Shown here: positions 571-34,484 of the stretch, one piece after another
Layout: every line of letters begins with the position of its first letter
How positions within the stretch are numbered: the stretch's first letter is position 1
Assembly (NCBI RefSeq): GCF_021869535.1
Contig: NW_026262690.1
Location: 83,204,001-83,268,000, forward strand
Direction of reading: 5' to 3'
From: Mytilus californianus
Lineage: Eukaryota
DNA length: 64,000 bases
Program-made: the position numbers and the translations under genes
Notes under the pieces: model-generated
The model's database searches: none
Told to the model about the DNA's origin: nothing
Seen by the model: only the letters and a program-made list of their open reading frames with translations

Positions 571-3500
571 CTTTATTCAACATCTCATCTGCTTCATCAA
601 GCACCAGCATCTTTATAGATCTTGTTCTCAAATTTCTTCTTTTTATCATATCTGTAGTGAAAAGTAAAATGTTGAAACTATCTCACAGGATGAAATGTGA
701 AGACTTTTTCATTTACAAATAAAATGCTTCGTTGGGGCGCAGCTTGATACGACCGCAGAGGTCGAACCCTGAACAGTTGGGGCAAGTATGGACACAACAT
801 TCAAGCTTGATACAGCTCTGAATTTGGATTGTTATTAAATATTTGACACAGCATAGGTTTCTGACACAGAAAGAATGTGGTCTAAGAACTTGAATTTTTT
901 TAATTTACCTATTATGGTCCAATGTCCAAAATCAAAATACATGGTTAGATTCAGCTTACAAAGAACCCCATATATTCAATTTTTGTTAAAATCAAACAAA
1001 GTTTAATTTTGGACCCCAACTTGGACAAACTTGAAAACTGGGCCCATAATCAAAAATCTAAACACATGTTTAGATTCAGCATATCAAATAACCCCAAGAA
1101 TTCAATTTTTGCTAAAATCAAACTAAGTTTAATTTTGGACCCTTTGGACCTTAATGTAGACCAATTTAAAAAATGGGACTTAAAATTAAAAATCTAAATA
1201 CACGGTTAGATTTGGAATATCAAAGAACCCCAATAATTCAATTTTTGATGAAATCAAACAAAGTTTAATTTTGGACCCTTTTGACCTCAATATGAAACAA
1301 TTTGATAGCGGGGCCCACAAATAAAAAATCTAAATTCATGGTTAGATTCAGCATATCAAAGTACCCCATATATTCAATTTTTGTTGAAATAAAAAAAAGT
1401 TTAATTTTGGACCCCAACTTAGTCCAACTTGAAAACTGGGCCCATAATCAAAAATCTAAACACATGTTTAGATTCAGCATATCAAAGAACCCCAAGAATT
1501 CAATTTTTGTTAAAATCAAACTAAGTTTAATTTTGGACCCTTTGGACCTCAATGAAGACCAATTTAAAAAACGGGACCCAAATTAAAAATCTAAAAACAC
1601 GGTTAGATTTGGCATATCAAAGAACCCCAATAATTCAATTTTTGATGAAATCAAACAAAGTTTAATTTTGGACCCTTTTGACCTCAATATGAACCAATTT
1701 GATAGCGGGGCCTACAAATAAATCAAAGCACGAAAGCGCTGTAAAGGCAGTTAATTACAGGTTGTGTGTATTTTAAGTCCAGTTATATCATTATCTTGCA
1801 TAGTACAGTGTACTTATCAGAGGTGGCTTTCAGTATTTAAGATTTAGAGTTCTCTAATGATATTGAATAAGTTTTATGAATGTCATATTCTGAGCACTAT
1901 ATGAAGGCGATTGTTCTCACTTGTTTATGAACTAGTGCATTATGTCCAGTTTGTACCTTTTTTATCTATGTTTATAGTCAAATTAGTTATCAAAGGTACC
2001 AGGATTATAATTTAATACGCCAGACGTGTGTTTCGTCTACATAAGACTCATCAGTGACGTTCAGATCAAAATAGTAATAAAGCCAAACAAGTACAAAGTT
2101 GAAGAGCATTGAGGACCCAAAATTCCAAAAAGTTGTGCCAAATATGGCTAAGGTAATCTATTCCTTGGATAAGAAAATCCTTAGTTTTTTCATTGGCAAT
2201 CATAACACATCTCCTTATTTATATAATGATCTATATTCAACGACCTCAGGTACAAAAAAAATGTATGTAACTAAACTATGATGGGAAACCTTTGACTTCT
2301 TTCTTTATATAAACTTTTGATTTGGTACCATAGAACTATGTAGAGTAAATGTACATTGCAACATGTCAACTCCAAGCAAAATTATATTTCCAAGCATAAA
2401 GTAATTTATGAATGAAATAAAATGCTCCGCTGGGGTGCAGCTTGATACGACCGCAGAGGTCGAACCCTGAACAGTTGGGGCAAGTATGAACACAACATTC
2501 AAGCTTGATTCAGCACTGAATTTGGATTGTAATTAAATATTTGACACAGAATAGGTTTCTGATACAGAATGAAAGTGGTCTAAGATACTTAAAAAAATTT
2601 AATTTACCTATTCAAACCATATCATTATTATTTGCTTTTATATATAAATCAGAAATAACAAATTTAAAATGGAAAATTTTAAAGAAAAAAAAGGAAAAAG
2701 AATCCCCCCCCCCCAAATTTTTTGAACCCCCTTATGATTCATCACCCCAAAACTCAATCCCAGCCTTCCCTTTGTGGTATGGTACCTTGCAGTACAATTT
2801 CAGAGAGATCCATACACTTGAACACATGTTATTGTCTGGAAACTAGAAAAATGCTTATTTTTGGCCCCTTATTCCTAAACTTTTTGGGCAATTACCCCCA
2901 AACTCAATTCCAGCTTTCCCTTTATGATATGGAACCTTGTAGTACAATTTCATAAAGATCCATACACTTACACACAAGTTATTGCCATGAAACTAGAAAA
3001 ATGCTTGTTTTTTGCCCCTTTTTTGCCCCTTTTTGGCCCCTTTTTCCTAAAATTTGGAGGCAATTACCCCCAAAAATCAATCCCAGCATTCCCTTTGTGA
3101 TATGGAACCTTGTGGTACAATGTCAGAGAGATCCATACACTTACACACAAGTTATGTCTGGAAGTTACATAAATGCTTATTTTTGGCCCCTAATTCCTTA
3201 ACTGTTGGTACCATAACCCCCAAAATCAATCCCCACTTTCCTTTTGTGGTATTGAACCTTATTTTAAAATTTCATTGAGATCCATTCACTTAAACTAAAG
3301 TTAGAGTGCGAAAACTAATGTGTCTTCGGACGACGACGCCGGACGACGACGACGCCAACGTCATACCAATATACGACCACAAAATTTTTTTTGCGGTCGT
3401 ATAAAAAGTTCTTAATTAAGAAATAAACTGATTCGCTGAGCGCAGCTGGATACACCCGCAGAGGTACTACCCTGAACAGCTGGGGCAAAAATGGACACAA

Positions 3501-12500: not shown

Positions 12501-15500
12501 AAAGGGGTCGACTGACAATTTTGGTCAAGACAACTTATTTGTAGATCTTACTTTGCTGAACATTATTGCTGTTTACAGTAATCTCTATCTATAATAATAT
12601 TCAAGATAATAACCAATAAAATGCTTCGCTGGGGCGCAGCTTGATACGACCGTAGAGGTCGAACCCTGAACAGTTGGGGCAAGTATGGACACAACATTCA
12701 AGCTTGATACAGCTCTGAATTTGGATTGTTATTAAATATTTGACACAGCATAGGTTTCTGACACAGAAAGAATGTGGTCTAAGAACTTGAATTTTTTTAA
12801 TTTACCTATTATGGTCCAATGTCCAAAATCAAAATACATGGTTAGATTCAGCATATCAAAGAACCCCATATATTCAATTTTTGTTAAAATCAAACAAAGT
12901 TTAATTTTGGACCCCAACTTGGACAAACTTGAAAACTGGGCCCATAATCAAAAATCTAAACACATGTTTAGATTCAGCATATCAAAGAACCCCAAGAATT
13001 CAATTTTTGCTAAAATCAAACTAAGTTTAATTTTGGACCCTTTGGACCTTAATGTAGACCAATTTAAAAAACGGGACTTAAAATTAAAAATCTAAATACA
13101 CGGTTAGATTTGGAATATCAAAGAACCCCAATAATTCAATTTTTGATGAAATAAAACAAAGTTTAATTTTGGACCCTTTTGACCTCAATATGAACCAATT
13201 TGATAGCGGGGCCCACAAATAAAAAATCTAAATTCATGGTTAGATTCAGCATATCAAAGAACCCCATATATTCAATTTTTGTTGAAATCAAAAAAAGTTT
13301 AATTTTGGACCCCAACTTGGACCAACTTGAAAACTGGGCCCATAATCAAAAATCTAAACACATGTGTAGATTCAGCATATCAAAGAACCCCAAGAATTCA
13401 ATTTTTGTTGAAATCAAACAAAGTTTAATTTTGGACCCCAATTTGGACCAACTTGAAAACTGGGCCAAAAATCAAAAATCTAAATACATGTTTAGATTCA
13501 GCATATCAAAGAACCTCATATATTCAATTTTTGCTAAAATCAAACAAAGTTTAATTTTGGACCCTTTGGACATTAATGTAGACCAATTTAAAAAACAGGA
13601 CCCAAATTAAAAATCTAAAAACATGGTTAGATTTGGCATATCAAAGAACCCCAATAATTCAATTTTTGATGAAATCAAACAAAGTTTAATTTTGGACCCT
13701 TTTGACCTCAATATGAACCAATTTGATAGCGGGGCCTACAAATAAAAAATCTAAATACATGGTTAGATTCAGCATATCAAAGAACCTCATATATTCAATT
13801 TTTGTTGAATTCAAACAAAGTTTAATTTTGGACCCCAATTTGGACCAACTTGAAAACTGGGCCCATAATCAAAAATCTAAATACATGTTTAGATTCAGCA
13901 TATCAAAGAACCCCATATATTCAATTTTTGTTGAAATCAAACAAAGTTTAATTACTGGACCCTATCTTGGACCAACTTGAAAACTGGGCCCATAATCAAA
14001 AATCTAAACACATGTTTAGATTCAGCAAATCAAAAAACCCCAAGAATTCAATTTTTGTTAAAATCAAACTAAGTTTAATTTTGGACTCTTTGGACCTCAA
14101 TGTAGACCAATTTAAAAAACAGGACCCAAAATTAAAAACCTAAATACACGGTTAGATTTGGAATATCAAAGAACCCCAATAATTCAATTTTAGATGAAAT
14201 CAAACAAAGTTTAATTTTGGACCCTTTTGACCTCAATATGAACCAATTAGATAACGGGGTCCACAAATAAAAAATCTAAATACATGGTTAGATTCAGCAT
14301 ATCAAAGAACCCCATATATTCAATTTTTGTTGAAATCAAACAAAGTTTAATTTTGGACCCCAATTTGGACCAACTTGAAAACTGGGCCAAAAATCAAAAA
14401 TCTAAATACATGTTTAGATTCAGCATATCAAAGAACCTCATATATTCAATTTTTGCTAAAATCAAACAAAGTTTAATTTTGGACCCTTTGGACATTAATG
14501 TAGACCAATTTGAAAACTGGACCCAAAATTAAAAATCTAAATACACTGTTAGATTCGGATGAGAAAAAATTGGCCCCCCACAATTTCTTTTTATCCCCCC
14601 CCCCCCCCTTTTTCCCCAAAAAAAATTCTTTCCCTCAAGATATGGTCATAATCTCAATTCAAATTTCCAATGGAGTTGGCAACCATAATTACCCATTTAA
14701 ATTTACCATAGTGCTAACTTAATCTATTTTATAATAGAATTAATAAAAATATAGTGTCAAATCTTTCATATGGATTTTTTTGTAAAAAAAAAAAGATGAA
14801 AACATTTGCAGATATTTTTACTGGTCTTCCTTTATAAATATGCATTTCTTTAAACATAATTTAAAAGCAGTGTAAGGGAAGTAACCAAAACGTTGTATTT
14901 GGATTACCTCCCTTACACTGTTTTAGATTATCTTTATTGTTCATTAACCATTACTTTATACATAATTTAAAAGCAGTGTAAGGGAGATAATTTCAATGAT
15001 GTATTTGATTTATCTCCCTTACACTGCTTTAAATTATGTTTTGTACTAAAGTATTTGTCCATTAACCAGGACAACCTTGTTTTTCCCCCTTTTTTGCCCC
15101 TAATTCCTAAACGGTTTGAGCCATAACCCCCCAAAGCAAATCCTAACCATCCCTTTGTGGTATGGAAACTTGTAGTATAATTTCAGAGAGATCCATACAC
15201 CGTTCCACAGTTATTGTCTGGAAACTAGAAAATGCTCATTTTTGGCCCCTTTTTGGCCCCTAATTCCTTAACTGTTGGTACCATAACCCCCAAAATCAAT
15301 CCCAACCTTCTTTTTGTGGTATTTAACCTTATGGTCAAATTTCAAAAAGATCCATTCACTTAAACTAAAGTTAGAGTGCGAAAACCAATATGTATTCGGA
15401 CGACGACGACGCCAACGTCATACCAATATACGACCACAAAATTTTTTTGCGGTCGTATAAAAACTGCAAAATTTCCTTAAAATTACCAATTCAGGGGCAG

Positions 15501-19168: not shown

Positions 19169-20590
19169 TTCTACTTCTACTTCTACCGGTTAGTGACCAC
19201 CGTCATCATGTTGACTATTCTGTCACTTTTGGGTGTGCGCAAATATAATTTTGATTAAAGTAACAAACAAAAAAAGGAGCTATACAAATATTTAACCATA
19301 ATATTAAGTGGGGATTAAAAACAAGGGCTTTTGATTGATTTGTTTGTCAGGAGCCTCTTGAACGATTCAAGGCTGCTGACAGATGTACTTGTAACTGATG
19401 AGGGTAAGGCATTCCAATTCCTGATGGTCCTCGGGTAGAATGACTCTTTCCTTGTTGTCGTGTTACATTGTGGGATCTGAAAAGAGTTTGTGCCCATATT
19501 TCTTGAGATCCTGTCCGGTGGAACGAGTTTGTGGCTTGCTGCAACGTTGACCTCCTGATTGTTGATCTTATACAGCATTGATAGTCGTGCGCTTCTCCTT
19601 CTATCTTCAAGTGGTGTCCACATTAGTTGTTCCAACATATCAGTAACGGATGATCTGTTACTGTACCGGTTTGTTACATATCTGGCAGATCTCCTTTGTA
19701 CCATTTCTAACTTGTGTTTATCTTTTTGGAGGTATGGATCCCATAGAGAGCTGGCATACTCGACTGTTGGTCTAACGAGGGAGATGTAGGCCTTTTCTTT
19801 GATATCGCTGTTTGAGATATTGAGATTTCTTTTGAGAAATCCGATGGTTTTATTTGCCTTGGCACAGATGTTTCCGATATGTTTTTCCCATTTAAGGTCT
19901 GATGTTATAGTTACTCCTAAGTATTTTGCAAATGTTATGTGCTCCAAAGTGTGGCTATGTAAACGGTAATCCTTTATAATAGGTGTTCTGTTCTTTGTTA
20001 CTGATAATACCTGACATTTATCTGGATGGAATTGCATCATCCATTTTTCTTCCCAGACAGCCAACTTGTCTAAATCTTCCTGGAGGGTATTATCATCTGA
20101 TGTTACTGTGATGTATGCAATGGTGTCATCTGCAAATAGCCTCACAGTTGATTTAATATTTTCTGGCATGTCGTTTATATAGAAGAGGAAGAGGCTGGGT
20201 CCTAGCACAGATCCTTGTGGTACCCCAGACTCTACATCAATGGAGTCAACATCAATGTTTCCCCTTCTATTAGTACTCTTTGGGTTCTCTCAGATAGGAA
20301 GCTTTTAATCCAGTCGTTTGTTTTTCCTCTTATTCCATAGTCACGGTTGAAGTTTGTGGGTTAGTAGACTATGGTCGACCTTGTCAAATGCCTTCGAAAA
20401 GTCCATGATTAGGCAGTCTGTTTGTTGGCCACTATCAAGGTTTTTGGTGATGTCGTCGATGAATTCTATCAGCTGGGTTTCACATGATAGTTTCTTCCGA
20501 AATCCATGTTGAAGGTCATGCAGGATGTTGTTTTTATCTGCATGGCACATGATATGGCTGGTTACTATGTGCTTCATCTTTGCTTCACAT
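19169..20590 (-). mobile_element. 5'-truncated CR1/L2-group non-LTR retrotransposon (reverse transcriptase C-terminal half)
   Basis: ORF 20577-20341 (QHGFR..SCETQL..DFSKAFDKVDH) and ORF 20208-19315 (LGPSLFLFYIND, FADDT, KYLGV, LVRPTVEYASSLWDP) are separated by frameshifts. (GTAGAA)3 tail at 19169-19186. Confidence 0.9.
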
Positions 20591-20727
20591 GCTTTTTTAT
20601 TTTCACTTGTTTACAAAATTGTTTCCTGCATTTTATGTTGCAGAATATTCAATATTTTCAAACTCCTCTTGCCACCTGCAACGTGCACCCGCTTCCAAAA
20701 TTAATTGGTCGTCCTATAATATCGGAA

Positions 20728-20955
20728 GGGTCGCGGTGGTCTAGTTGTCTAAGTAGTTATTCTACTGTATCACTAGCCTTTCAACACTGAACGGTTGTGA
20801 TGTCGAATCCCGCTAGACTCCAAACATTATTGACTAGGATTGTCATTTTATTATCGAAGGTCAGTGGTTCTCGATCTCCGTGCACTCCGACTTCCTCCAC
20901 CAATAAAAACTTACCTCCACGAAATTGGCGTTAAACACCAATCAATCAATCAATC
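20728..20955 (+). mobile_element. tRNA-derived SINE (degenerate)
   Basis: A-box-like ggtggtctagttg, B-box-like gtcgaatccc and a (caat)n tail. Homologous to the better-preserved minus-strand copy at 49987-50250. Confidence 0.7.
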
Positions 20956-21309
20956 TAATATCGATAAGCCTTAATTTTTTCCCCAAACGATCATGGTGTT
21001 GATTTAAAAGTCGTCATACGGTATTTTTCATTTTGTCAAACGATGCTAATGTATATATATATACATGATATAAGTTGTTTAGAAAATAAAAACAAAGGAG
21101 ATTATGCACGGAAAACATTTTTTAGTGACTAGAAAGATCTTTAACGTTAGAATTTTAAAATAAAATATGAGAAGAAAACTCTTATAATGTGATTGCTGTA
21201 AATAAACATAGAAAATTGGGACCACGGAACTAACTTTCTTGCTAAAAAACAAAGATAGCTAAATTTCCTACATATTACTATACAAATTTGAAACAAAACA
21301 TATGAAAAC

Positions 21310-21810
21310 TAAAGACTGAGCATCACGAACCCCACCAAAAAACGGGGGTGGTCTCATGTGTTTCGGAAGGGTGTGCTGATTATGCTCCACATGTGGCACC
21401 CGTGGTGTGTTCATGTAAGTACATATCAGGTGGTAAGTCTCATTCAGCAGGCCACATTAGAGGAAAAGAGGATGGGATTGAGGATAAAAAATCATTTTGA
21501 ATATATCCGTCGTCATCTGGGAAAAATATATTACATGACGGTCAGACAAATCGTGATGGCTCCATTAAATTTTCGACTTCACTACTTGGAAATCTTGTTT
21601 TAAGAGCTTCCTTGTAAGCAGCAGCACTCTATCAAGTAATTTCATGGTAGGAAATGCAAGCTCTGGAATATCGTATCAACTGCGAGATATATACTCCATA
21701 TGCATGCACTACTGGAATGATACTACATAGAAATGGAAAGTTCACAATGGGGAAGCTGAAATCATCTCTTTTGTCGTAATGTCAATTTCTAGATGTAAGT
21801 CAAGATATAA
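21310..21810 (-). mobile_element. Penelope-like retroelement fragment (RT C-terminal region), degenerate
   Basis: Minus strand translates YLDLHLEID..YDKRDDFSFPIVNFPFLCSIIP..AYGVYISQLIRYSRAC with stops and frameshifts. I recognise this motif set from bivalve Penelope-like elements (recall, not searched). Confidence 0.6.
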
Positions 21811-23908
21811 GGCAAACATTTGGTCTAGTTGTCTCATTGGCAATCTTTAAATTTGATAAAAATCTATTGTAATAGTTCAGCATTCCCAGATAAGCTTTCA
21901 ATTCTGCCACGTTTGTCGGACTTGGGGCTTTATCTATCGCCTCAACTTTACTCTCCACTGGATAGATTCCGTGTTTGTTTATTTTAAATCCCAAATAAAC
22001 AACTTCTTCGGCCATAAACACACACTTTTGTCTCTTTAACCGAATTCCTATTCTCTTGAATCTAGACAAAACCTCAGAAAGAGTACTTAGATGTTCCTCC
22101 ATTGTTTTACCCGTTATCAGTATATCATCTACTCGAACCAAAACATTTGAGATACCTTGAACAACATTTTCAAGTGTTCTCTGGAAAATACCTGGGCTGG
22201 ACGCTACACCATACGGAAGTCTATTGTACCTGAATAAACCCTTATGCGTGTTTATAGTCACATACCTTTTACTGTCCTCATCAAGTTCAATTTGTTGGTA
22301 TGCTTGATTTAAATCCAATTTTGTATATTCTTGTCCTCCTCCAAGCGTTGCGTATAAATCCTCAGTTTTAGGAATCGGATAATTATCCAACTTTGAAACG
22401 GCATTAACGGTTACCTTGTAGTCACCACAAATTCTAATAGATCCGTTCTCCTTAACTACAGGTACTATTGGAGCGGCCCAGTCGAAAAATTCCACTTGCT
22501 GAATTTGACTCTCCTTCTCAAGACGTTCAAGTTCCATCTCCACTTTATCCTTCAACGCATACGGCAAAGGGCGAGCCTTGAAATATTTCGGTACAGCACT
22601 CTCATCAACATAAATCTTGGCTTTCATGCCTTTTACAGTTCCAAGTTCATCTTTGAAAACCTCCTTATTTGCTTCCAAGATCACATTTAAATCACTCGGT
22701 TGATTATCAGTTCCAACGACGGAGAAAATATCCTTCCAATCCAGTCGGAGTTTGTTCAACCAGTCTCGGCCAAGTAAATTCGGACCTTTACGCTTCACTA
22801 TCAGTATTGGCAATTTTGCGCTTTCCTTCTTGTAATTGACATTGACGATTGCACGTCCTATTACAGGAATCTGCTCTCCCATGTATGTTCGGAGTTTAGC
22901 ACTTGTCGGTTCGATTCTGAATTTAGACTTGTATTCCTTGTAAGTATCCTCGCTCATGATAGAAACTGACGCTCCGGTATCTATCTCCATGGCTATTTCA
23001 CATTCATTCACATTGATTTGCACTTTATATGCCTCATTAGATTTATTTCCAAAATAAAAAACTGAGTAAACTTCATTTTCACTTTCACTTTCGCTACTTT
23101 CATCCTGCTCCATGAAATGAGCACGTGGTTTAAAACGTGATTTGAACTCTCTGTGATTTTCACTTAAATTCCCATTGGCAGATTTGTTACGGCATTTCTT
23201 TGCGATATGTCCTTTCTTTTTACAACTGTGGCATTTTGCATCCTTAAACCTGCAATCGGCGGCTAAGTGATTTCCTCCACACCGGTAACAATCTCCTTGT
23301 TTCGAATTTCCAGAGTTGTTTCTTGTATATGATTTTGAAACTTTGTTGACTTGTTTCTGAAATGTTGCATTTGTCCCACTCGCTTGGATGTCTTGTGCGT
23401 TCTTCTCAGCAGTCTCCATAGCGGTAGCAATTTCCAATGCCTTGTCAAAAGTTAAATTCGGCTCTGCTAACAGCCTCCTCTGTATGCGGTCACTCTTTAT
23501 TCCGACGACTAACCTGTCTCGTAACATCGCGTTTAACGTGTCACCATAATTACAGTGTTCTGTCAGACTTCTTAGTGCTGCAATAAATGTCCTCACTGAC
23601 TCATCGCTGTGTCTTGTTCTACTGCTAAATTTAAATCTTTGAATAATTTCTGATGGTACTGGATCTCGGTGGTCTTTCACTAGTTTTGTTAAATCGGCCA
23701 GTGATTTCGTTCCTGGTTTGGCTGGTGCTAATAAATCCCTTATTAATTTGTAGGTATTCTTCCCACATACACTTAAGAAAATATCCCTTTTCTGGTCTTC
23801 TTCGTCTATCTCATTAGCATTAAAATAATGTTCCATACGTTCTACATATTGTGTCCAATCTTCGGATTCATCAAAAGAGTCTAATTTACCGTAAGTCGGC
23901 ATTGTCAC
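21800..23908 (-). pseudogene. Gypsy gag-pol ORF (702 codons open; the last ~15 codons come from unrelated flanking repeat)
   Basis: ORF track 21800..23908 with the domain order described above. Confidence 0.85.
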
Positions 23909-26525: not shown

Positions 26526-29500
26526 ATGTCTGAAGCGAAAGTTTCAAAACGAGGGAGGAAGCCAACTTTGACTGATTCAGATAGAAAACGACGACGTACG
26601 GAAATAAATGCCAAAAATAATAAGAATAGGATCTACATAGGTGCCCAGTATGATCGCTGGAGTAAGCTTAAGAGTGCTCTGTGTGTGCAAACACATGCTG
26701 AGGTGGCGAAAATTTTGCTTGATGGGTAATTTTCTAAAGACCGAATTTTACCCGACAAAATTACATGTATTTGAAGGAATTTCTACTGTTCCCTGAAAGA
26801 CTAAATAGTAAAATTTGCCTTGGCTCAATGGAGAGCAAAGGGATTTTTTAAAAAGTTTATGGGAATGACAACTTTAACATTGGAAGTATGGTGAAAAAAT
26901 ATATGAAAAACGGAAGACTTAAGAAATTTAAATGCATTGCAGTTCCAAAATAATTTTCCTAAGTGTACATACTTGATATTCAATCCTTTTTATAGTACCT
27001 ATTAGGGGCCATATGTATATATATAGTTGTTTGGTTTTTTTTTTGGGGGGGGGGATATTCTGGCCTTGTAAGAACTAATAAAAATGAATATAAGCTTGGC
27101 CAAGTCTGGATGATTGACAATGAATATTCTGCAACAGTAAATGCAGCAGGAAGAAATTGTCAACAAAATTAGAACACAAATTTTCATGTGGCTTATTCGC
27201 CCCAAAAATTAAGCAAGCAGTACCAAAGGGGAAATGAACATACTATAAAAAAATCCCTGCAACATGAAATAATGTCTCCCATGAAATATTGTCTGTCGAA
27301 AAAATTTTCATATAAAATATTGTCTGTGGACACTTTTTTATAATGTAATTAATAACTGTGCAGGACAATATTTCATCATGAACTAGGGTCCTTGTCCTTG
27401 AAATTTCTTTCACCTCTTTCTTGACAATATTTTACTATGCAATACTTTCCATGACAATATTGTACCAAGGATTTGTATAGTTAGACAATATTCTAACTAT
27501 ACAAATCCTTGATTGTATGTGAAATTCTGTCCATGACAATATTTCAATGTGAAATACTGCCCACAAAAATATTTTTTAATATATGTCTTCCCTGTGAAAT
27601 TCTTTGCCATGAAATTGTGAGTTCATCTGGAATGTTTTTAATATTTTTTTAGGAAGAGTATGTGCACGTGTATAACCATAAATTGCTGCATAAATTTTAT
27701 GGGACCATTGAAGAACAACTTACCTTTTTTAAAAGAGAAAGATTAAATAAATCCTAAAACAAATGCCCAGAATCGATCAAAATAGGCCAGACATCACTTT
27801 CTAGAATATATTGTATATTTTTTATTTATTAAAGTGTTTCAAACCATGTTATGAGAGGTACAGTATTTTCATTTAAACCTCTTGCAAATTAGTGATATAG
27901 ATTAACATACAAAAAAAAATTGTGAATTTTGAACAAACATCAATTTCATTCCTATTTTATACAGGTATGAAAAACATCCTATGATTGACCAAAGAATTCC
28001 TGTGCCAAATGACATCAACATTAGACCAACCAGCCCTCCTCGTACATGTAGTGAAAATCAAGAAGAGACCTCAGGTGTGAGTATAATATATGAAACAACA
28101 TCAATCTCTGGTCTAGTGAAATCTACATTGAAGCAGCATTCTGTACACATATCTGATGTATCTGGTATATCATTTTGTCTTGCTTTGATGAAGTTGTTAA
28201 GGCTAGACCTGGGCCTGCTTAAGACATCGATGTCTACCTGTTGAACTGGAAAAGTTTTAAGGCTTTGCTGGTCCTTCAAAAGTGAAATTTTACTTTGTGT
28301 GTTTTATGTTTCAGAAAGTTTAGACCCTTTTCTTGATTTTAATGTAGCTTTTTTTTATTCCTACAGAAGGTGCCAAAATAATCTGAAAAAATTAACAGTA
28401 TGCTTGATGATTGATTTGTGTTTGCTTAATGTCCAGTGGCAAATAGTGGGGATTTAAACTGTGAAGCTTAGAGGAATGTATGAATTGAAATCCAGGTGCT
28501 TGTTTATTTTACATGTACCATCTTCTGTAGACTGAGACTTGAACAAAATTTTATCTCAGTATCTTAAACAGCTTTTGTTTTTCTAAAACACACAATGCAT
28601 ATTATTACGTACATGGGGGGACATATACTTGCCTCCCCATGCCGCTGAACTTATATTTAATTGAGAGCAACAAAAACACATCTACTGCCATGGCACATTT
28701 ATTTAGAAGAGCCAGATTACAGCACATGATAAATATGCATCATTACACAAAGGGACACTACTCTCACGACTTTACAATAAAACACATACGACAATACATA
28801 TACATAACAATATATTTAATTTTGCTTTCATCATCGTGAGAACAAAACATTTCATAAGTCTAATCAAGGGGGTATGAATTAATTAAGTTTTTGGTTTTAA
28901 CTATTTCATATTATATTTTCCTTCCAGTACTTCAGGACTCTTATAACCAATATCTCATATCTTTGGTCCATGAGTCTGTACCAGTGAGTTTGCTCTTTTA
29001 GTTATGTAACTCATACACAAATTAAAGTATCCGATGGACAAATAAAACTAATAAAATGAAATTAAAATAAAAACATATTAAAAAGAGACACTAACACAAA
29101 ACAAAATTTAATGTAAATTTATTTTACTGCATACCTTTGTTAGAAAGTTAAAGCTGGTATATATCTTGGTCCAGTCATGCCTTTAAAGTTTTCCAAGTAC
29201 ACATGTTTTTCTTAGTAAATTTGATAATGTGGAAATTAAAGTATGAATCATTTTACATAACTTGTACATTTTGTACTTGTCAACCTCAAAATATTAATAT
29301 ATATGAAACTGAACTAGTCTAGATGATGCACTTAATATCTTGTTGAAAACTTTTATTGTACAATTATGCCACTCAATTTTAAAGATTAATTAATTATTGA
29401 TTACATAATGTCTTTTTTTGTGAGCTGGCACTAAATTTAGTTCTCTTTGCTACTTGTATAACATTAAGCAGTTTCAATTGGGTCAAAATCCATGATAATT

Positions 29501-32500
29501 ATTCATTTTCACATATCAACAACATTGCACATTTGACTTCTTGCTTGTGTACAACTCTAAATCTTAACATTTTCTGTTCAATAGCATTAAATTTTGTCTG
29601 ACTTGTAGTCCTTCAAAAAGTATTTCATAAAGACTCCTTTTCAAGGATAAAACTTTATTGTATGTATAAATTTACCATACATTGTAGTACATGTAGGTAC
29701 ACGTAAGAAAATATTTCTGCTATTTAAAGAAGCACATTACAAATACACTTATTTAGTGGCTAACATCTAGCCATTTGGTTTCTGGTGGAGAGTCATGTCT
29801 CATTGGCAATGATACCACATTTCCTTATTCTATATTATTTATATTCTTTATTCGAAAATATTTCTTTGTACATGTAGTTTATTAATTTTATATTTTTTAA
29901 AGGTCAATGCCAGAGTGATGAATACCAGAGATGTAGGTACCTTTGAAGACCAACCTGATGTTGTAGAGCCAGTAGAAGGTACATATTATTATAATGACAT
30001 TAAAATTTTGACAAAGATCCCTGACAGTTCTGCCAACAGTTTGAAAATTAAAAAAATCTTTAATATATTTGAATTTATGAAGTACAAATTAAGGAAGTCA
30101 AAAGCTTAGCCAAACTAAAAATTGAGAGACTGTAATTTTTTTTGTAGTCATATGGTTAAAAATTTTATTTCTGCATTATAGATGATTGGAACATTACAGT
30201 ACATTTTATTATTCTGCACTACAACATTTGTGATATTTCAAGCAGCTGCCTCTGCAATAAATTTATGGTTCTCATCAAACTGATATCACGACAATAAAAG
30301 ACGTAAAAAAATTGAACTATAAAGGTGGGAGAAATTTTTTATTTTAGCCACAATTGGCAAAAATTTTATGAAGAAATATTTTTAGATTATTTTTGGATCT
30401 TTTCTCTTTCTCCTTTTGAACTAATGGAACAATATATGTATAAATAAACACAATCTAGTTATCAGACACTGTCATCCTGACATATGATTACAGGTGCGTA
30501 AGTAAACAATATAAAAATAAGAAGATGTGGTATGATTGCAAATGAGGCAACTATTCACCAAAGATCAATGTGGATGTAAGCAATTATAGGCAACCATATG
30601 GCCTTCAACAATTAGAAAAACCCATACCGTATAGTCGGCTAAAATAGGCCCCAACATGAAAAATATAAGACAATTAGATTGAGAAAACTAACAGCCTAAT
30701 TTATAACAAAACAATTTACAGACATTATTCTTTACATTTTAACCAATCTCTATTTTCATGGACAAAGCGACACAAATGCTTTAAAATGTTTGCACATCTT
30801 TTTTTGTAGCATGCCTGGCAAGGGAGAGTACAGAGGCTATAATGAAATTAATTTTATCCTCAGAGAGCTCAATTTTTCTAGAGTGGCCAGACAATGAGAT
30901 CCATATTGAGGATAGTAAGATTTCTATTAGAACTAAATAGATAGACCAAGGATAGTTCACTGTGGCCCCTTTTTTCTCCTTAAACTAAGACAAAACTAAT
31001 ATTTTTATTTTGCCTATCCATACACACATCCAGATATGGATAAAAATGTTTACTTTTAGGTTTATTTCACCATGTTTACAGTAACTGAAGATGATATGTC
31101 AATGATACTTCGTATACATATAGATATTAGATAGTACCAAATGATGTTGGAGGGGGTAACTAATTTCTGATTTACAGTATGCAAATAGATTAGTATTTCA
31201 AAATACTGTAAAATTACCAAGAGGGACTTTGAAGAATTAAAATATTTGGGATACAAAAATAAGGAGATGTGGTATGATTGCCAATGAGACAACTATCCAC
31301 CAGAGACCAAATGAAGTAGATGTTAACAACTCAAACATCAAACATCTCACAACACACATACACAGAAATCTTAAACCATAGATTTTACTATTACCATTGC
31401 ATTACATTTTGAAAAAATACTACAATCTAACTGGTGTCTATAACCTCTTGCAAAACATGTATGAACATTTTATTTGAAGTTTTGTTTGATTGCAGATTCA
31501 CTGCAAAGTGATGATGAATTTTCAGAATACATTATACAGTATAAATATGACCAGGAGGCCATAGCAATGGAAGGTAAATCTCACAAAAACTCAAGAATTA
31601 ATAGAACTTTCAAAATTGTTGAACAATGACTGCTAACACATTGCTATTAGATATTTGTGTCCCTTCATTAAGAAAATTACCATAAAATCGATGGAAATAG
31701 ATCCATTATTATGTCTGTTCTGTTCTTTGTATGACCTTTCTGAAAGGATGAGATTTAAGCAATTACAATGAACATTATTTTCGAGTACTAAGTATTCATA
31801 TAAGAAACTGTGTCACCTTGACCTACATTTAACATGCATGACAGGTTAAGGTTTGTAGTTGCTACTACAAGTCAATTGATAAAATAAATTTCAGTACTTG
31901 GAGAAAGCTGAATATCAAACATTTTTTTTTTTATTTTTAAGTTAACCTATATCTTTAGCATGCATAAACCTATTGCACTTAATGCTATTTATATATTCTT
32001 CCAATTAATATCAGATTTTATCACAGCCAAATATAGGTTTCAGAAATTTATCAAAGTTGCCACACATATCTCCTATGCATTATTTCCTACACTGGCCAAC
32101 ACAAAAAAAAAACTTGCACAGACTCTCCTACAAACATGAAAGTTGTGCATCTCTTATTATGACTTTTTATTTGAATTATTTTAGGGGTTTTCCTTGGCCA
32201 AAAAGGTTATCAATTTTCAGTTTATATTTCATCAAACCAACCTACATTATTATGTGAATTATTGATTTCAAATATTTTAAGTTACGAATGTAAAACAGAT
32301 GCAAAACTCACAACTAAATTATATCATAAATTATAAGTTTGAAGTGAAATTTGTGGTTTACCTGTACCCACATGATGAAATCAGCAATAATTGGTATCCC
32401 ACGAAAAGTAATGAATCCACAGTAGATGTTTTAATCAAATTTATACAGTGAAAAGACATAATATTACGGTACATGGTGTACACATTAAAGAAACAGGTGG

Positions 32501-33748
32501 ACTTGACCTTCATTTACACAAATTACTAGTTAAGTTATGCAAAGCAATCACAAGTCAAGGAAGAAATTTTATAGACATTGGTTTTTTTTCAGTACTTTGA
32601 GGAAGGAGTTTATCAAACAGTCTTTTTGTTTTAAGTAAACCACCTGTCCTAAGTCAGGAATCTGATTACAGTAGTTGTCGTCTGTTTATGTAGTTCATAT
32701 GTGTTTCTCGTTTCTCGTTTTTATATAGATTAGACAGTTGGTTTTTCCGTTTGAATGGTTTTACACTAGTAATTTTTTGGGGCCCTTTATAGCTTGCTGT
32801 TCGGTGTGAGCCAATACTCCGTGTTGAAGGCCGTACCTTGACCTATAATGGTTTACTTTTATAAATTGTAACTTGGATGGAGAGTTGTCTCATTGGCACT
32901 CATACCACATCTTCCTATATCTATGTATATTTTCAGCATGTGTGAACCTTGTGCACTTTCTATTTTTATTAATCTAATTTTAAATTACGGTATGTCTGAA
33001 GTTTCTCATATATTCTGATATTTGAAACATAATTTTTTTTTCAGACCAAGAAAGTCTGCAGAGTCATGATGTCAAAACTGAAATGGTTGATAGTGATGGC
33101 ATCTTTGATAATGAGTTTCATGTTGTGTTTTTGGACCATGTCTACTGTCAACGACCATATGTCAATTTTGGTGAACTTGTATGTGAAAGAACTCGAGAAA
33201 GGTTGGAACGTGAAAGAACTAGAGAAAGGTTCATCAACCTTAAAGAAGAGTGTAAGCTAAATCTAACTGAACATGCCAATTTTGAATTAGTGAAAAGGTC
33301 AAAATATCTAAGGTACGTTGAACTGTATGATACAGAAATTCCAACAATACAGACTTGCATCACCATTTATGAAAATTTTCGAGCTGAAATAATTGTTCAT
33401 GGACAAAAGTTATCAGACAATCATGCTATATGGAACACACCTGAACTACCATCTGAGTTTGTTGGAATTCATCATGTGCAGGAGCTGCTGCAAACAGTCT
33501 CTTACTATACAGTCTGCATTGGAAATCCAGATCCTGATTTCCTGAACAATTTGCTGCTTGGTGACTATGGAAATAAACCATCCTCAACATGTGCAGGCTA
33601 TTTGGAAGAAACTTTTGGAGCCTACTACAGATACTTTTACTATAACAGAACCATAAGATCAAGCAACTGCTCTTTTTTGTCACTTGTAGAAAGGTGTAAG
33701 AATTGCAAAGTTTACCGTAAATCACTCATCAACAAGAAAATCGCCTGA
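26526..33748 (+). CDS. Uncharacterised 5-exon gene, 389 aa: basic N-terminal module, acidic linker, Cys-containing C-terminal domain (possibly transposase-derived)
   Basis: Exons 26526-26725, 27965-28076, 29903-29978, 31496-31573 and 33045-33748 are all GT-AG, with phases 2,0,1,1 that join into one open frame ending TGA at 33746-33748. No expression evidence is available. Confidence 0.7.
27466..27511. repeat. Perfect 20-bp inverted repeat with 6-nt loop
   Basis: caaggatttgtatagttaga-caatat-tctaactatacaaatccttg, embedded in degenerate gacaatatt/aatattgtc repeats (~27270-27620). Confidence 0.85.
30515..30720 (-). repeat. Dispersed repeat family R1 (3' part)
   Basis: aataagaagatgtggtatgattgcaaatgaggcaact is the reverse complement of the R1 terminus. 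Confidence 0.6.
32640..32925 (+). repeat. Dispersed repeat family R1
   Basis: Matches 11148-11430 closely. Confidence 0.75.
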
Positions 33749-34484
33749 ACATGTTACATGACGGAAATAGTGATTGACGGACGATGAAAAGATTATCAAA
33801 TTTAATCAACTTACAGTTCTAACAATAGATTTGAAAAATAAGATTAAAACCTTAGAGAAGAAATTACAGCAAGCTTCATAAGTGAATGATTTTATATATT
33901 TATTATATTATGGTATCCTAAGGCAAAGTGGTGGATTTAAATATATAACTCAATATTGTAATAGTTAAGTCGTGCAATGGTAAATATGAGGGTTGCCAGC
34001 TCATAAGCCCTTGTTTCACTCATATGAAACACTTGCAGAAAAATACAAGATTTTGCTGTGGAAAGTAAAAACCTTTGTCCCACGAAAAAAGGTTATAACA
34101 AGAAACTCACTATAATTGCTGTCAATGCAGAGCATAAAAAAATATTTAAATTTGATATTAATTTACAAAATATAAACATAACAAAATCTCTATAATTAAA
34201 TTTCATCAAACATGAAACATTAAAAGAAATTAAAGTGTAGTATATCTATAAAGTATGTCAGTGAATCTGCTTTTATTGCATGACATGATTTCAGTACACT
34301 TTTGTAGCAAACGATTTTTCAGATTGGTTTGTACATATGAGTCTACAAATGCACACATTTAATTTGTTCTTTTAGCACTTAAGGCAACAGGTTGACTTTC
34401 ACAGATATTTCCAGTTCTAACTTTTTAGTTAATGGGCAATTGAATGGAGGTAGACAGTGAGATATAGTATAATATGTTCACCAA

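What the first reader, a model, noticed from the sequence alone, without database searches (positions are those of the whole stretch)
26526..33880. Orphan 5-exon gene that looks like a chimera of a ZNF653/ZNF692-type N-terminal module and a P-element-transposase-associated domain
Seen: five exons splice into an uninterrupted 389-aa frame. Exon 1 encodes GRKPTLTDSDRKRRRTE..RIYIGAQYDRWSKLK..THAEVAKILLDGY, which by recall resembles the N-terminal segments of vertebrate ZNF653 (GRPRLTESDRARRRLE..RVYLG) and ZNF692 (RIRLGG..QW..LK..HSQLAKFLLDRY). Exons 2-4 are short acidic/Pro-rich linkers. Exon 5 has VC.GNPD..TIRSSNC..RCKNCKVYRKSL, which by recall precedes the core of THAP9/P-like transposases in marine invertebrates. 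No C2H2 fingers and no DDE core follow; a broken coiled-coil remnant (LKNKIKTLEKKLQQ, ~33830-33875) lies past the stop. Inference: a transposase-derived neogene or chromatin factor assembled by exon capture, or a decaying intron-rich transposase gene.
Basis: partly seen in the sequence, partly recalled or inferred. Interest (0 to 1): 0.7.

Follow-up and report, generated by a model that had tools for sequence, protein, structure and literature searches.

The report
Chimeric mussel gene from transposase fragment
This is a real, conserved mussel gene that joins the first exons of one bivalve gene family to the non-catalytic front domain of a P-element-type "jumping gene" enzyme; it is a tidy but not unprecedented case of a transposon piece becoming a host gene.

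Summary
The window is Mytilus californianus, and the gene is LOC127738702, lying between eIF4A3 and COMMD1/INTS7. A sixth in-frame exon (30810-30914) appears in both public gene models and gives 424 aa.

The RefSeq protein starts in exon 2.

The gene is not an orphan:
- Exons 1-2 are 59% identical to the N-terminus of a mussel/oyster family that ends in a different domain, possibly DDE-transposase-like.
- Exon 3b and exon 5 match a M. californianus paralogue, LOC127704353.
- The exon-5 domain has 175 cluster representatives in the 50%-identity library. In six it precedes a P-element/THAP9-type RNase H/GTP-binding core with no THAP domain. In seven it precedes C2H2 arrays.
- It has no Pfam match and no convincing PDB fold match. 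Four Cys and two His are near-invariant.

Exons are 95-97.5% identical between the two species against 80-92% for introns, and omega is 0.2-0.35.

No transposase core, C2H2 fingers or convincing TIRs are in the window, and the coiled-coil relic past the stop is real. The ZNF653/692 link could not be tested. This scan did not find the gene on other DNA.

The parts
26526..26725 (+). Exon 1, with start codon. It encodes a basic N-terminal module: a KRGRKPT...RKRRR stretch followed by predicted helices. It is absent from the RefSeq CDS.
   Evidence: ORF and GT donor. It is 97.5% identical to M. coruscus against 86% for intron 1. Omega is 0.11-0.19. It is the N-terminus of the M. coruscus protein P0155 and is homologous to P0181, P0182 and P0183.
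27965..28076 (+). Exon 2, a Pro/Ser-rich linker. The RefSeq start codon lies at 27981.
   Evidence: Phase-2 acceptor matches the exon 1 donor. It is 97.3% identical to M. coruscus. The ATG at 27981 is AGG in M. coruscus. It is homologous to exon 2 of family A.
28077..28200 (+). In-frame continuation of exon 2 past the annotated donor. It may be an alternative longer exon or a relic of the ancestral exon.
   Evidence: It is 96.8% identical to M. coruscus. The reading frame stays open and stays homologous to P0181/P0182 as far as the ...QHSVH.SDVS.IS motif.
29903..29978 (+). Exon 3, an acidic linker. It is the least conserved exon.
   Evidence: It is present in the RefSeq and M. coruscus models. 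At 89.7% identity it is no better conserved than the introns.
30810..30914 (+). It is a 105-nt, phase 1-1 exon carrying the motif LEWPDNEIH.
   Evidence: It is present in P0001 and P0155. It is 95.2% identical to M. coruscus. It is homologous to a repeated unit of the paralogue P0156 (E 6e-4).
31496..31573 (+). Exon 4, an acidic linker.
   Evidence: It is present in both models. It is 96.2% identical to M. coruscus.
33045..33748 (+). Exon 5. It encodes the roughly 220-aa N-terminal domain of P-like (TNP/THAP9-type) transposases and ends at the stop codon.
   Evidence: 175 relatives were found. In six long relatives the domain lies N-terminal to TNP-like RNase H/GBD cores. The AF2 model has pLDDT 90.8. 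C145, C196, C205, C208, H106 and H114 are invariant and all retained here. Omega is 0.23-0.35.
33737..33740 (+). A-run that is one base shorter than in M. coruscus and L003. The frame shifts and the C-terminal tail is shortened to ...KKIA*.
   Evidence: Three-way DNA comparison.
33774..33878 (+). Out-of-frame relic of the coiled coil (leucine-zipper position) that follows the domain in transposases and in the paralogue.
   Evidence: tblastn to L002 and L003. It is continuous with the domain in P0006. Conservation is intron-like at 89.7%.

Best explanation
LOC127738702 is a real, selectively maintained chimeric host gene of the Mytilus californianus/coruscus lineage.

Origin of the parts:
- The 5' part (exons 1-2) was copied at the DNA level from a bivalve-wide gene family that I call family A. 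That copy supplies a basic, probably nuclear-targeting and nucleic-acid-contacting N-terminal module and a Ser/Pro linker.
- The 3' part (exon 3b and exon 5) descends from an immobilised P-element-type transposon. Only the roughly 220-aa N-terminal, non-catalytic domain survives. The coiled coil was cut off by a stop and a frameshift, and the HTH/RNase H/GTP-binding core is gone.

Most likely mechanism (inferred, about 40%): the protein goes to the nucleus. Through the probably Zn-binding (C4 plus 2 His) transposase N-domain it recognises the DNA sites, or the partner proteins, that related P-like transposases use. It would then act as a catalytically dead regulator: a KP/66-kDa-type repressor of those transposons, or a transcription factor using their dispersed sites. 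The acidic middle would serve as an effector or spacer.

Shown: the gene structure, the chimeric ancestry, the synteny, the selection and the domain's association with P-like cores. Inferred: splicing in vivo, zinc binding, nuclear location, and DNA binding or repression.
For: Identity and synteny:
- The window equals the M. californianus locus lying between a DEAD-box gene and the COMMD1 and INTS7 genes. M. coruscus has the same neighbours.

Exon 1 to exon 2 join:
- M. coruscus P0155 reads ...LLDG|YEKH....
- The same junction and phase are seen in family A proteins of M. edulis, M. galloprovincialis and Saccostrea.
- The exon 2 ATG is not conserved.

Chimera:
- P0155 residues 1-106 match P0182 at 59% (E 3e-39).
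- P0155 residues 193-426 match P0156 at 57% (E 1e-89), and exon 3b matches a P0156 repeat.
- The family A gene of M. edulis sits at another locus.

Transposase origin of exon 5:
- Six long relatives carry TNP-like RNaseH_N, GBD and RNaseH_C domains after the exon-5 domain and have no THAP.
- L002 shows domain, coil and pre-RNase H piece in a row.

Selection:
- Exon identity is 95-97.5% against 80-92% for introns.
- Omega for exon 5 is 0.23 (Fisher p 0.001) and 0.35 (p 4e-5). Omega for exon 1 is 0.11-0.19.
- All near-invariant Cys, His and Trp residues are kept.

Loss of mobility:
- No core, fingers or convincing TIRs were found.

Precedent for N-terminal-only P proteins acting as repressors: PMC7776569.
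Against: - No RNA evidence was available. The RefSeq model omits exon 1.
- Both public models may be partly ab initio predictions.
- Exon 3 is no better conserved than the introns, and a conserved in-frame extension of exon 2 hints at other isoforms.
- The domain has no recognisable DNA-binding fold. Its only weak structural resemblance (Z <= 5.2, within noise) is to RWD/UBC-like protein-interaction folds.
- Its fusion to C2H2 arrays is what one expects of an effector or oligomerisation domain, not a second DNA binder.
- The dimerising coil that KP-type repressors keep is lost here.
- The exon 1 model is of low confidence (pTM 0.41).
Confidence: 0.72

Rival explanations
1. Same gene, different mechanism. 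The transposase N-domain is a protein-protein interaction or oligomerisation module, analogous to KRAB, SCAN or BTB in front of zinc-finger arrays. DNA or chromatin contact would come from the basic exon-1 module. The protein would act as an adaptor, or as a dominant-negative partner of proteins that carry the same domain.
For: - Seven relatives carry the domain in front of C2H2 arrays. One of them does so within a single uninterrupted ORF.
- The only structural resemblances are weak and are to RWD/UBC-like interaction folds.
- The N-terminal regions of P transposase and THAP9 are reported to mediate oligomerisation (abstract of bioRxiv 10.1101/2020.10.06.328815, listed).
Against: - In THAP-less P-like transposases this domain is the only candidate for the site-specific end-binding function apart from the HTH.
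- The invariant basic residues R192, R204 and R212 around the CxxC helix fit nucleic-acid contact.
- The Z scores are in the noise range.
Confidence: 0.35
2. Exon 1, perhaps with the long form of exon 2, is not part of the exon-5 transcript in M. californianus. The RefSeq 352-aa model would then be right, and exon 1 would belong to a separate short transcript or be a relic of a duplicated family A gene.
For: - RefSeq protein XP_052106005.1 starts in exon 2.
- The frame through 28077-28200 stays open, is conserved at 96.8%, and runs to a stop at 28244. Exon 1 plus a long exon 2 could therefore encode a protein of about 160 aa.
Against: - The exon 2 ATG is AGG in M. coruscus, so exon 2 cannot start translation there.
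- Exon 1 is under strong constraint, and its donor phase fits the exon 2 acceptor.
- The M. coruscus model joins the two exons.
- The residues just after the junction (YE.H) are shared with family A proteins.
Confidence: 0.15
3. The locus is a decaying fragment of an intron-containing P-like transposon, wrongly annotated as a gene and without function.
For: - The coil after the stop is broken.
- A 1-nt A-run change alters the C-terminal tail in M. californianus.
- The related L002 copy carries a stop and a frameshift.
Against: - The ORF is intact in three species.
- Omega is well below 1.
- Exons are clearly better conserved than introns and than the post-stop relic.
- All invariant residues are kept.
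- The position is syntenic, and no TIRs or core remain.
Confidence: 0.06

Closest known systems
Drosophila P-neogenes, and the KP and 66-kDa P-element repressors
   Same: These are stationary or truncated derivatives of a P-superfamily transposase. They keep the N-terminal non-catalytic part and have lost the catalytic core. In the neogenes, new 5' sequence was recruited; that point rests on my own knowledge of Pinsker et al. 2001, whose citation appears. The repressor function of N-terminal-only proteins is described in PMC7776569.
   Different: The retained domain here is not THAP (no Pfam hit, and a different Cys pattern). The dimerising coil is lost rather than kept. The 5' exons come from another conserved gene family. 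The host is a bivalve.
THAP9 and TNP-like (P-element) transposases
   Same: The exon-5 domain is homologous to the N-terminal region of proteins with Pfam TNP-like RNaseH_N, GBD and RNaseH_C domains.
   Different: None of the THAP domain, the HTH, the RNase H core, the GTP-binding domain or the TIRs is present at this locus.
LOC127704353 (M. californianus) and LOC134691009 (M. trossulus), uncharacterised proteins
   Same: They have the same N-domain (61% and 38% identity) without a transposase core. LOC127704353 also shares the LECPDNEIH acidic unit.
   Different: They keep the coiled coil, which is expanded in LOC127704353. They lack the exon 1-2 module.
Family A: M. edulis P0181, M. galloprovincialis P0182 and Saccostrea cucullata LOC134259221
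   Same: Exons 1-2 are homologous (59-80%), with the same intron position and phase.
   Different: Their C-terminal part is a different conserved domain. It has only a weak, sub-threshold ISL3 DDE hit and is absent from the window. They lie at another locus.
Vertebrate ZNF653 and ZNF692
   Same: The only shared item is a recalled motif resemblance in a basic N-terminal segment. I did not verify it.
   Different: There are no C2H2 fingers here. No similarity was detected by any search I could run.

Membership tests
P-element/THAP9 (TNP-like) transposase | Split RNase H catalytic domain with a GTP-binding insertion | tested here: not met
   tblastn of six TNP-like proteins against the whole window matched only 33053-33739, which is the N-domain. 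Pfam gave no hit on exon 5.
P-element/THAP9 (TNP-like) transposase | N-terminal THAP (C2CH) DNA-binding domain | tested here: not met
   No THAP hit was found at E <= 10 in exon 1 or exon 5, nor at the E cut-offs used (1e-3 and 1e-4) in the TNP-like relatives. The conserved pattern here is C-x50-C-x8-C-x2-C plus two His.
P-element/THAP9 (TNP-like) transposase | Terminal inverted repeats flanking the element | tested here: not met
   Only weak AT-rich inverted matches (72-84%) were found around exon 5.
N-terminal domain family of THAP-less P-like transposases (not in Pfam) | Sequence homology over about 150-220 aa, with the near-invariant residues Y82, H106, H114, W117, C145, G147, N148, R192, C196, C205, C208 and R212 | tested here: met
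   phmmer found 175 representatives at E <= 1e-3 and 68 at E <= 1e-10. The alignment of 54 sequences shows every near-invariant residue present in the window protein.
Domesticated transposase gene (neogene) | Orthologues at a syntenic position in other species | tested here: met
   The M. coruscus locus L007 has the same flanking genes and is collinear at the DNA level. L003 from a third mussel aligns through the intron and the 3' flank.
Domesticated transposase gene (neogene) | Purifying selection on the transposon-derived coding part | tested here: met
   Omega is 0.23 (p 0.001) and 0.35 (p 4e-5). The exon is 96.9% identical against 89.7-91% for its flanks.
Domesticated transposase gene (neogene) | Transcription and correct splicing | not testable with these tools
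   No RNA-seq was accessible. The only support is two public gene models.
ZNF653/ZNF692-type zinc-finger proteins | C-terminal C2H2 zinc-finger array | tested here: not met
   Pfam found no C2H2 in any exon or in P0155. C2H2-bearing relatives match the window only in the N-domain.
ZNF653/ZNF692-type zinc-finger proteins | Homology of the basic N-terminal segment to exon 1 | not testable with these tools
   No reference sequences were at hand. The region-limited word search over proteins of 238-758 aa returned only bivalve proteins. Pfam and PDB sequence and profile searches were blank.
Family A (P0181, P0182, P0183) | Conserved C-terminal domain (weak ISL3-DDE-like hit) | tested here: not met
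   tblastn of P0182 and P0183 against the window matched only exon 1 and exon 2.

The most novel reading that the evidence does not exclude
The exon-5 domain is an undescribed, probably zinc-binding domain of molluscs. So far it is seen in bivalves and in Patella. It replaces THAP at the front of P-superfamily transposases and has been exapted repeatedly in three forms: as stand-alone genes, as this chimera, and as the N-terminal domain of tandemly expanded C2H2 zinc-finger genes. In the last form it would be a molluscan counterpart of KRAB or SCAN, that is, a transposon-derived module that defines a lineage-specific transcription-factor family.
Probability: 0.3. Interest if true: 0.7.

Novelty: new variant of a known kind. 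Interest (0 to 1): 0.5.

Why it matters
- It gives a clean, datable example of new-gene birth in a mollusc by joining pieces of two unrelated gene lineages. One piece is a transposase fragment, and there is evidence that selection keeps the product.
- It corrects the RefSeq model, which misses the conserved first coding exon.
- It points to a roughly 220-aa domain that is absent from Pfam and has no convincing PDB fold match. The domain stands where THAP stands in classical P elements and has been reused in zinc-finger genes. It is therefore a concrete target for structural and DNA-binding work on how THAP-less P-like transposons find their ends.

Tried and rejected
- Pfam scans of all exon peptides gave only noise.
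- PDB sequence and profile searches for both modules were blank.
- Foldseek against the PDB gave nothing below E 0.3. VIA-align wide gave Z <= 5.2, below the tool's stated noise level.
- The AF2 model of exon 1 had too low a confidence to search with.
- An exon-1 profile run against the 154 proteins then held gave no hit outside the exon-1 sequences it was built from.
- tblastn for exons 1-4 in L002 found nothing.
- The TIR search around exon 5 found nothing convincing.
- A search for remains of the family A C-terminal domain or of a TNP core in the window found none.
- Literature on ZNF692/653/276 covers only degrader targets.
- Earlier scan notes had nothing on this gene.
- The joined spliced protein of the window was never built or searched. 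Each exon was searched by reference, and the natural M. coruscus protein P0155 stood in for the whole.


Full report
**What the DNA is**

The window has no N runs. A 25.8-kb stretch of Mytilus californianus assembly GCA_021869535.1, chromosome record JAKFGE010000004.1, is contained in it without a difference.

The finding lies in the interval between a DEAD-box helicase gene on the minus strand (eIF4A3 according to an earlier scan note) and the COMMD1 (minus) and INTS7 (plus) genes. An LTR-retrotransposon gag-pol ORF lies upstream at 19.3-23.9 kb.

**Check of the observation**

With the borders read from the sequence, each exon has an AG acceptor and a GT donor. In one search I first set the exon 4 end three bases short; the printed context shows the donor at 31573|GTAAAT.

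| Exon | Coordinates | Length (nt) |
|---|---|---|
| 1 | 26526-26725 | 200 |
| 2 | 27965-28076 | 112 |
| 3 | 29903-29978 | 76 |
| 3b | 30810-30914 | 105 |
| 4 | 31496-31573 | 78 |
| 5 | 33045-33748 | 704 |

- RefSeq protein XP_052106005.1 (P0001, 352 aa) starts at the ATG in exon 2 (27981). It also uses exon 3b, which is phase 1-1, so skipping it keeps the frame. With exon 3b the full model is 424 aa.
Each exon was searched by reference.

**Is exon 1 part of the gene?**

The 90%-identity cluster of P0001 also holds Mytilus coruscus CAC5400473.1 (P0155, 433 aa). Several observations tie exon 1 to the gene:

It then runs through exons 2, 3, 3b, 4 and 5.
- Its locus (L007) has the same neighbours, a DEAD-box helicase gene, COMMD1 and INTS7, and is collinear with the window at the DNA level.
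- The exon 2 ATG that RefSeq uses is AGG in M. coruscus, so exon 2 cannot be the conserved start.
- Exon 1 is 97.5% identical between the two species, against 86% for intron 1. Omega is 0.19 against M. coruscus and 0.11 against a more distant copy (Fisher p 6e-10).
- In three Logan contigs from other mussels, DNA similarity starts at or within one base of the ATG and stops at or within a few bases of the donor.

I take the exon 1 to exon 2 join as well supported by homology. It is not proven by RNA.

**Selection on the rest of the gene**

Identity between M. californianus and M. coruscus:

| Segment | Identity |
|---|---|
| Exon 2 | 97.3% |
| Exon 3b | 95.2% |
| Exon 4 | 96.2% |
| Exon 5 | 96.9% |
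| Intron segments | 80-92% |
| Stretch after the stop | 89.7% |
| Exon 3 | 89.7% (no better than introns) |

- For exon 5, omega is 0.23 against M. coruscus (Fisher p 0.001).
- Against L003, omega is 0.35 (p 4e-5). L003 is a genomic contig from a third mussel that also aligns through the upstream intron and the 3' flank, so I take it to be orthologous.
- The ORF is intact in all three species.

**Where exon 5 comes from**

Pfam and PDB sequence searches were blank. The exhaustive phmmer search of the 50%-identity representative library found 175 proteins at E <= 1e-3 and 68 at E <= 1e-10. I scanned 19 long relatives against Pfam:

- Six (P0015, P0037, P0050, P0086, P0104, P0116) carry TNP-like RNaseH_N. 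Most also carry the GTP-binding insertion domain and RNaseH_C. This is the P-element/THAP9 core. In these proteins the exon-5 domain sits at the N-terminus, and none has a THAP domain.
- Seven (P0007, P0023, P0038, P0041, P0043, P0091, P0099) carry C2H2 arrays after the domain. In P0041 the domain and the fingers lie in one uninterrupted 2109-nt ORF, so that fusion is not a gene-model artefact.
- Four of the remaining six have no Pfam hit. The other two (P0109 with CUB domains, P0122 with VWA) matched the query only in short repeated stretches and are probably spurious.

Contig L002 carries mussel repeats also found in the window. It shows the same domain (55% identity), then the coil, then, after a stop and a frameshift, a 98-aa piece. 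That piece is 47-63% identical to the segment just before and overlapping RNaseH_N in the transposases.

Named relatives come from Mytilus species and from the limpets Patella vulgata and P. caerulea.

**What the domain looks like**

- An alignment of 54 relatives gives the near-invariant residues Y82, H106, H114, W117, C145, G147, N148, R192, C196, L199, R204, C205, C208, R212 and L215. Numbering is from the Met at 33083. All of them are present in the window protein.
- The four Cys (C-x50-C-x8-C-x2-C) and two His suggest a zinc site. That is an inference.
- AlphaFold2 with this alignment gives a confident model (mean pLDDT 90.8, pTM 0.84). It has a long helix, a four-stranded sheet with helices, then a beta-hairpin and a basic C-terminal helix that starts at the CxxC.
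- Foldseek finds nothing in the PDB below E 0.3.
- The wide VIA-align search gives at best Z 5.2 (rmsd 3.2 over 77 residues), to RWD/UBC-like and Mediator folds, for residues 46-142. The tool's own notes place this in the noise range.
- The fold is therefore without a recognised relative. I do not claim it is new.

**What is missing**

- tblastn of six transposases and two zinc-finger relatives against the whole window, and against the M. coruscus locus, matches only the N-domain.
- No convincing inverted repeats flank exon 5.
- The segment 33774-33878 lies out of frame just past the stop. It is homologous to the coil that follows the domain in L002, L003 and the paralogue.
- In all three orthologues the coil is cut off by the same stop. 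Its conservation is intron-like.
- M. californianus also has an A-run one base shorter (33737-33740) than the other two species, which shortens the tail to ...KKIA*. This could be real or a homopolymer assembly error.

**Where exons 1-2 and 3b come from**

A word search limited to residues 1-70 of the natural protein P0155 found three proteins with the same module:

| Protein | Species | Length | Identity |
|---|---|---|---|
| P0181 | M. edulis | 341 aa | 80% |
| P0182 | M. galloprovincialis | 672 aa, partial | 78% |
| P0183 | Saccostrea cucullata LOC134259221 | 390 aa | 63% |

- The homology runs through exon 2. P0155 residues 1-106 match P0182 residues 1-126 at 59% identity, E 3e-39.
- In the window the homology continues in frame past the annotated donor to about 28172. 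That stretch is 96.8% conserved with M. coruscus.
- These proteins end in a different conserved domain. P0182 and P0183 are 54% identical there, E 1e-58. The only Pfam signal is a weak, sub-threshold ISL3 DDE hit. No trace of that domain is in the window.
- The M. edulis gene lies at another locus. Synonymous divergence of its exon 1 from ours (pS 0.44) is about twice that of orthologous exon 5 against L003 (pS 0.22). This rests on only 44 synonymous sites.
- None of the exon-5-domain relatives then held (154 proteins in all) has the exon-1 module.
- Exon 3b is homologous to a repeated acidic unit (LECPDNEIH) of the M. californianus paralogue LOC127704353. That paralogue shares the exon-5 domain at 57-61% identity and keeps an expanded coil.

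The gene is thus a chimera of two lineages: exons 1-2 from family A, and exons 3b and 5 from an N-domain gene or element. The shared intron position and phase point to duplication at the DNA level and not to retrocopying.

**The ZNF653/ZNF692 idea**

I found no support for it and could not test it directly.

- There was no Pfam family at E <= 10.
- There was no PDB hit by sequence or by profile.
- The region-limited search covered proteins of 238-758 aa, a range I believe would include those proteins. It returned only bivalve sequences. That search needs shared 5-residue words, so a blank is weak evidence.
- The AF2 model of exon 1 is of low confidence (pTM 0.41), and I did not use it for a fold search.

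**Mechanism**

Shown: a conserved, syntenic, intron-containing gene whose product combines three parts:
- a strongly basic N-terminus (KRGRKPT...RKRRR),
- an acidic and Pro/Ser-rich middle,
- a folded transposase N-domain with all family-invariant residues.

Inferred: nuclear location; zinc binding; and action through the sites or partners of related P-like transposases, as a catalytically dead regulator.

The best-known precedent is the P element itself. N-terminal-only products (the 66-kDa protein and KP) bind P-element DNA and repress transposition (PMC7776569), and P elements have repeatedly become host genes (PMC3698922 and its references).

The main alternative is that the domain is an interaction or oligomerisation module. 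Its position in front of C2H2 arrays and the weak RWD/UBC-like resemblance favour that view. I put DNA or site recognition at about 40%, protein interaction at about 35%, and other or unknown at the rest.

**Verdict**

The chimera and neogene reading is supported. 'Orphan' and the ZNF653/692 label are not.

The gene is a new variant of a known kind, namely P-superfamily domestication. The unusual points are that the retained domain is not THAP and that the 5' exons were taken from another conserved family.

Noticed in passing
window 28077-28244: The reading frame of exon 2 stays open past the annotated donor. It stays homologous to family A proteins up to about 28172 and is 96.8% identical to M. 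coruscus. This may be an alternative longer exon 2, or a short isoform ending at the stop at 28244.
   Followed up: partly
window 33737-33740: The A-run is one base shorter than in M. coruscus and in a third mussel (L003). This shifts the frame and shortens the C-terminal tail. It could be a real species difference or a homopolymer assembly error.
   Followed up: partly
window 27981-27983: The ATG that RefSeq uses as the start of LOC127738702 is AGG in M. coruscus. The conserved exon 1 (26526-26725) is missing from the RefSeq CDS, so the RefSeq model looks N-terminally truncated.
   Followed up: yes
window 29903-29978: Exon 3 is no better conserved between M. californianus and M. coruscus (89.7%) than the surrounding introns, unlike every other exon. 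It may be young or weakly used.
   Followed up: no
L009:10001-12109 (ENA ERZ25069853, contig ctg33115l): The same transposase N-domain is fused to a C2H2 zinc-finger array in one uninterrupted 702-aa ORF. Five close paralogues and a further relative (P0038) map to a contig or contigs of the same length (659,381 bp), presumably one contig. If so, this looks like a tandemly expanded zinc-finger family carrying this domain. The organism was not identified.
   Followed up: partly
L002:5800-7132 (ENA ERZ6864376): A contig from a metagenome assembly carries mussel repeats and a P-like transposon copy. The order is N-domain, stop, coil, frameshift, then the segment preceding RNase H. The contig ends there.
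   Followed up: partly
window 19315-23908 (minus strand): There is a 702-aa gag-protease-RT ORF and a 297-aa RT-like ORF of a retrotransposon between the DEAD-box helicase gene (eIF4A3 per the earlier scan note) and exon 1.
   Followed up: no
window 1302-1586 and 12772-13610: ORFs are made of a repeated unit of about 40 aa (…[38 protein letters not shown]…). This points to a tandem or dispersed repeat present at least twice in the window.
   Followed up: no
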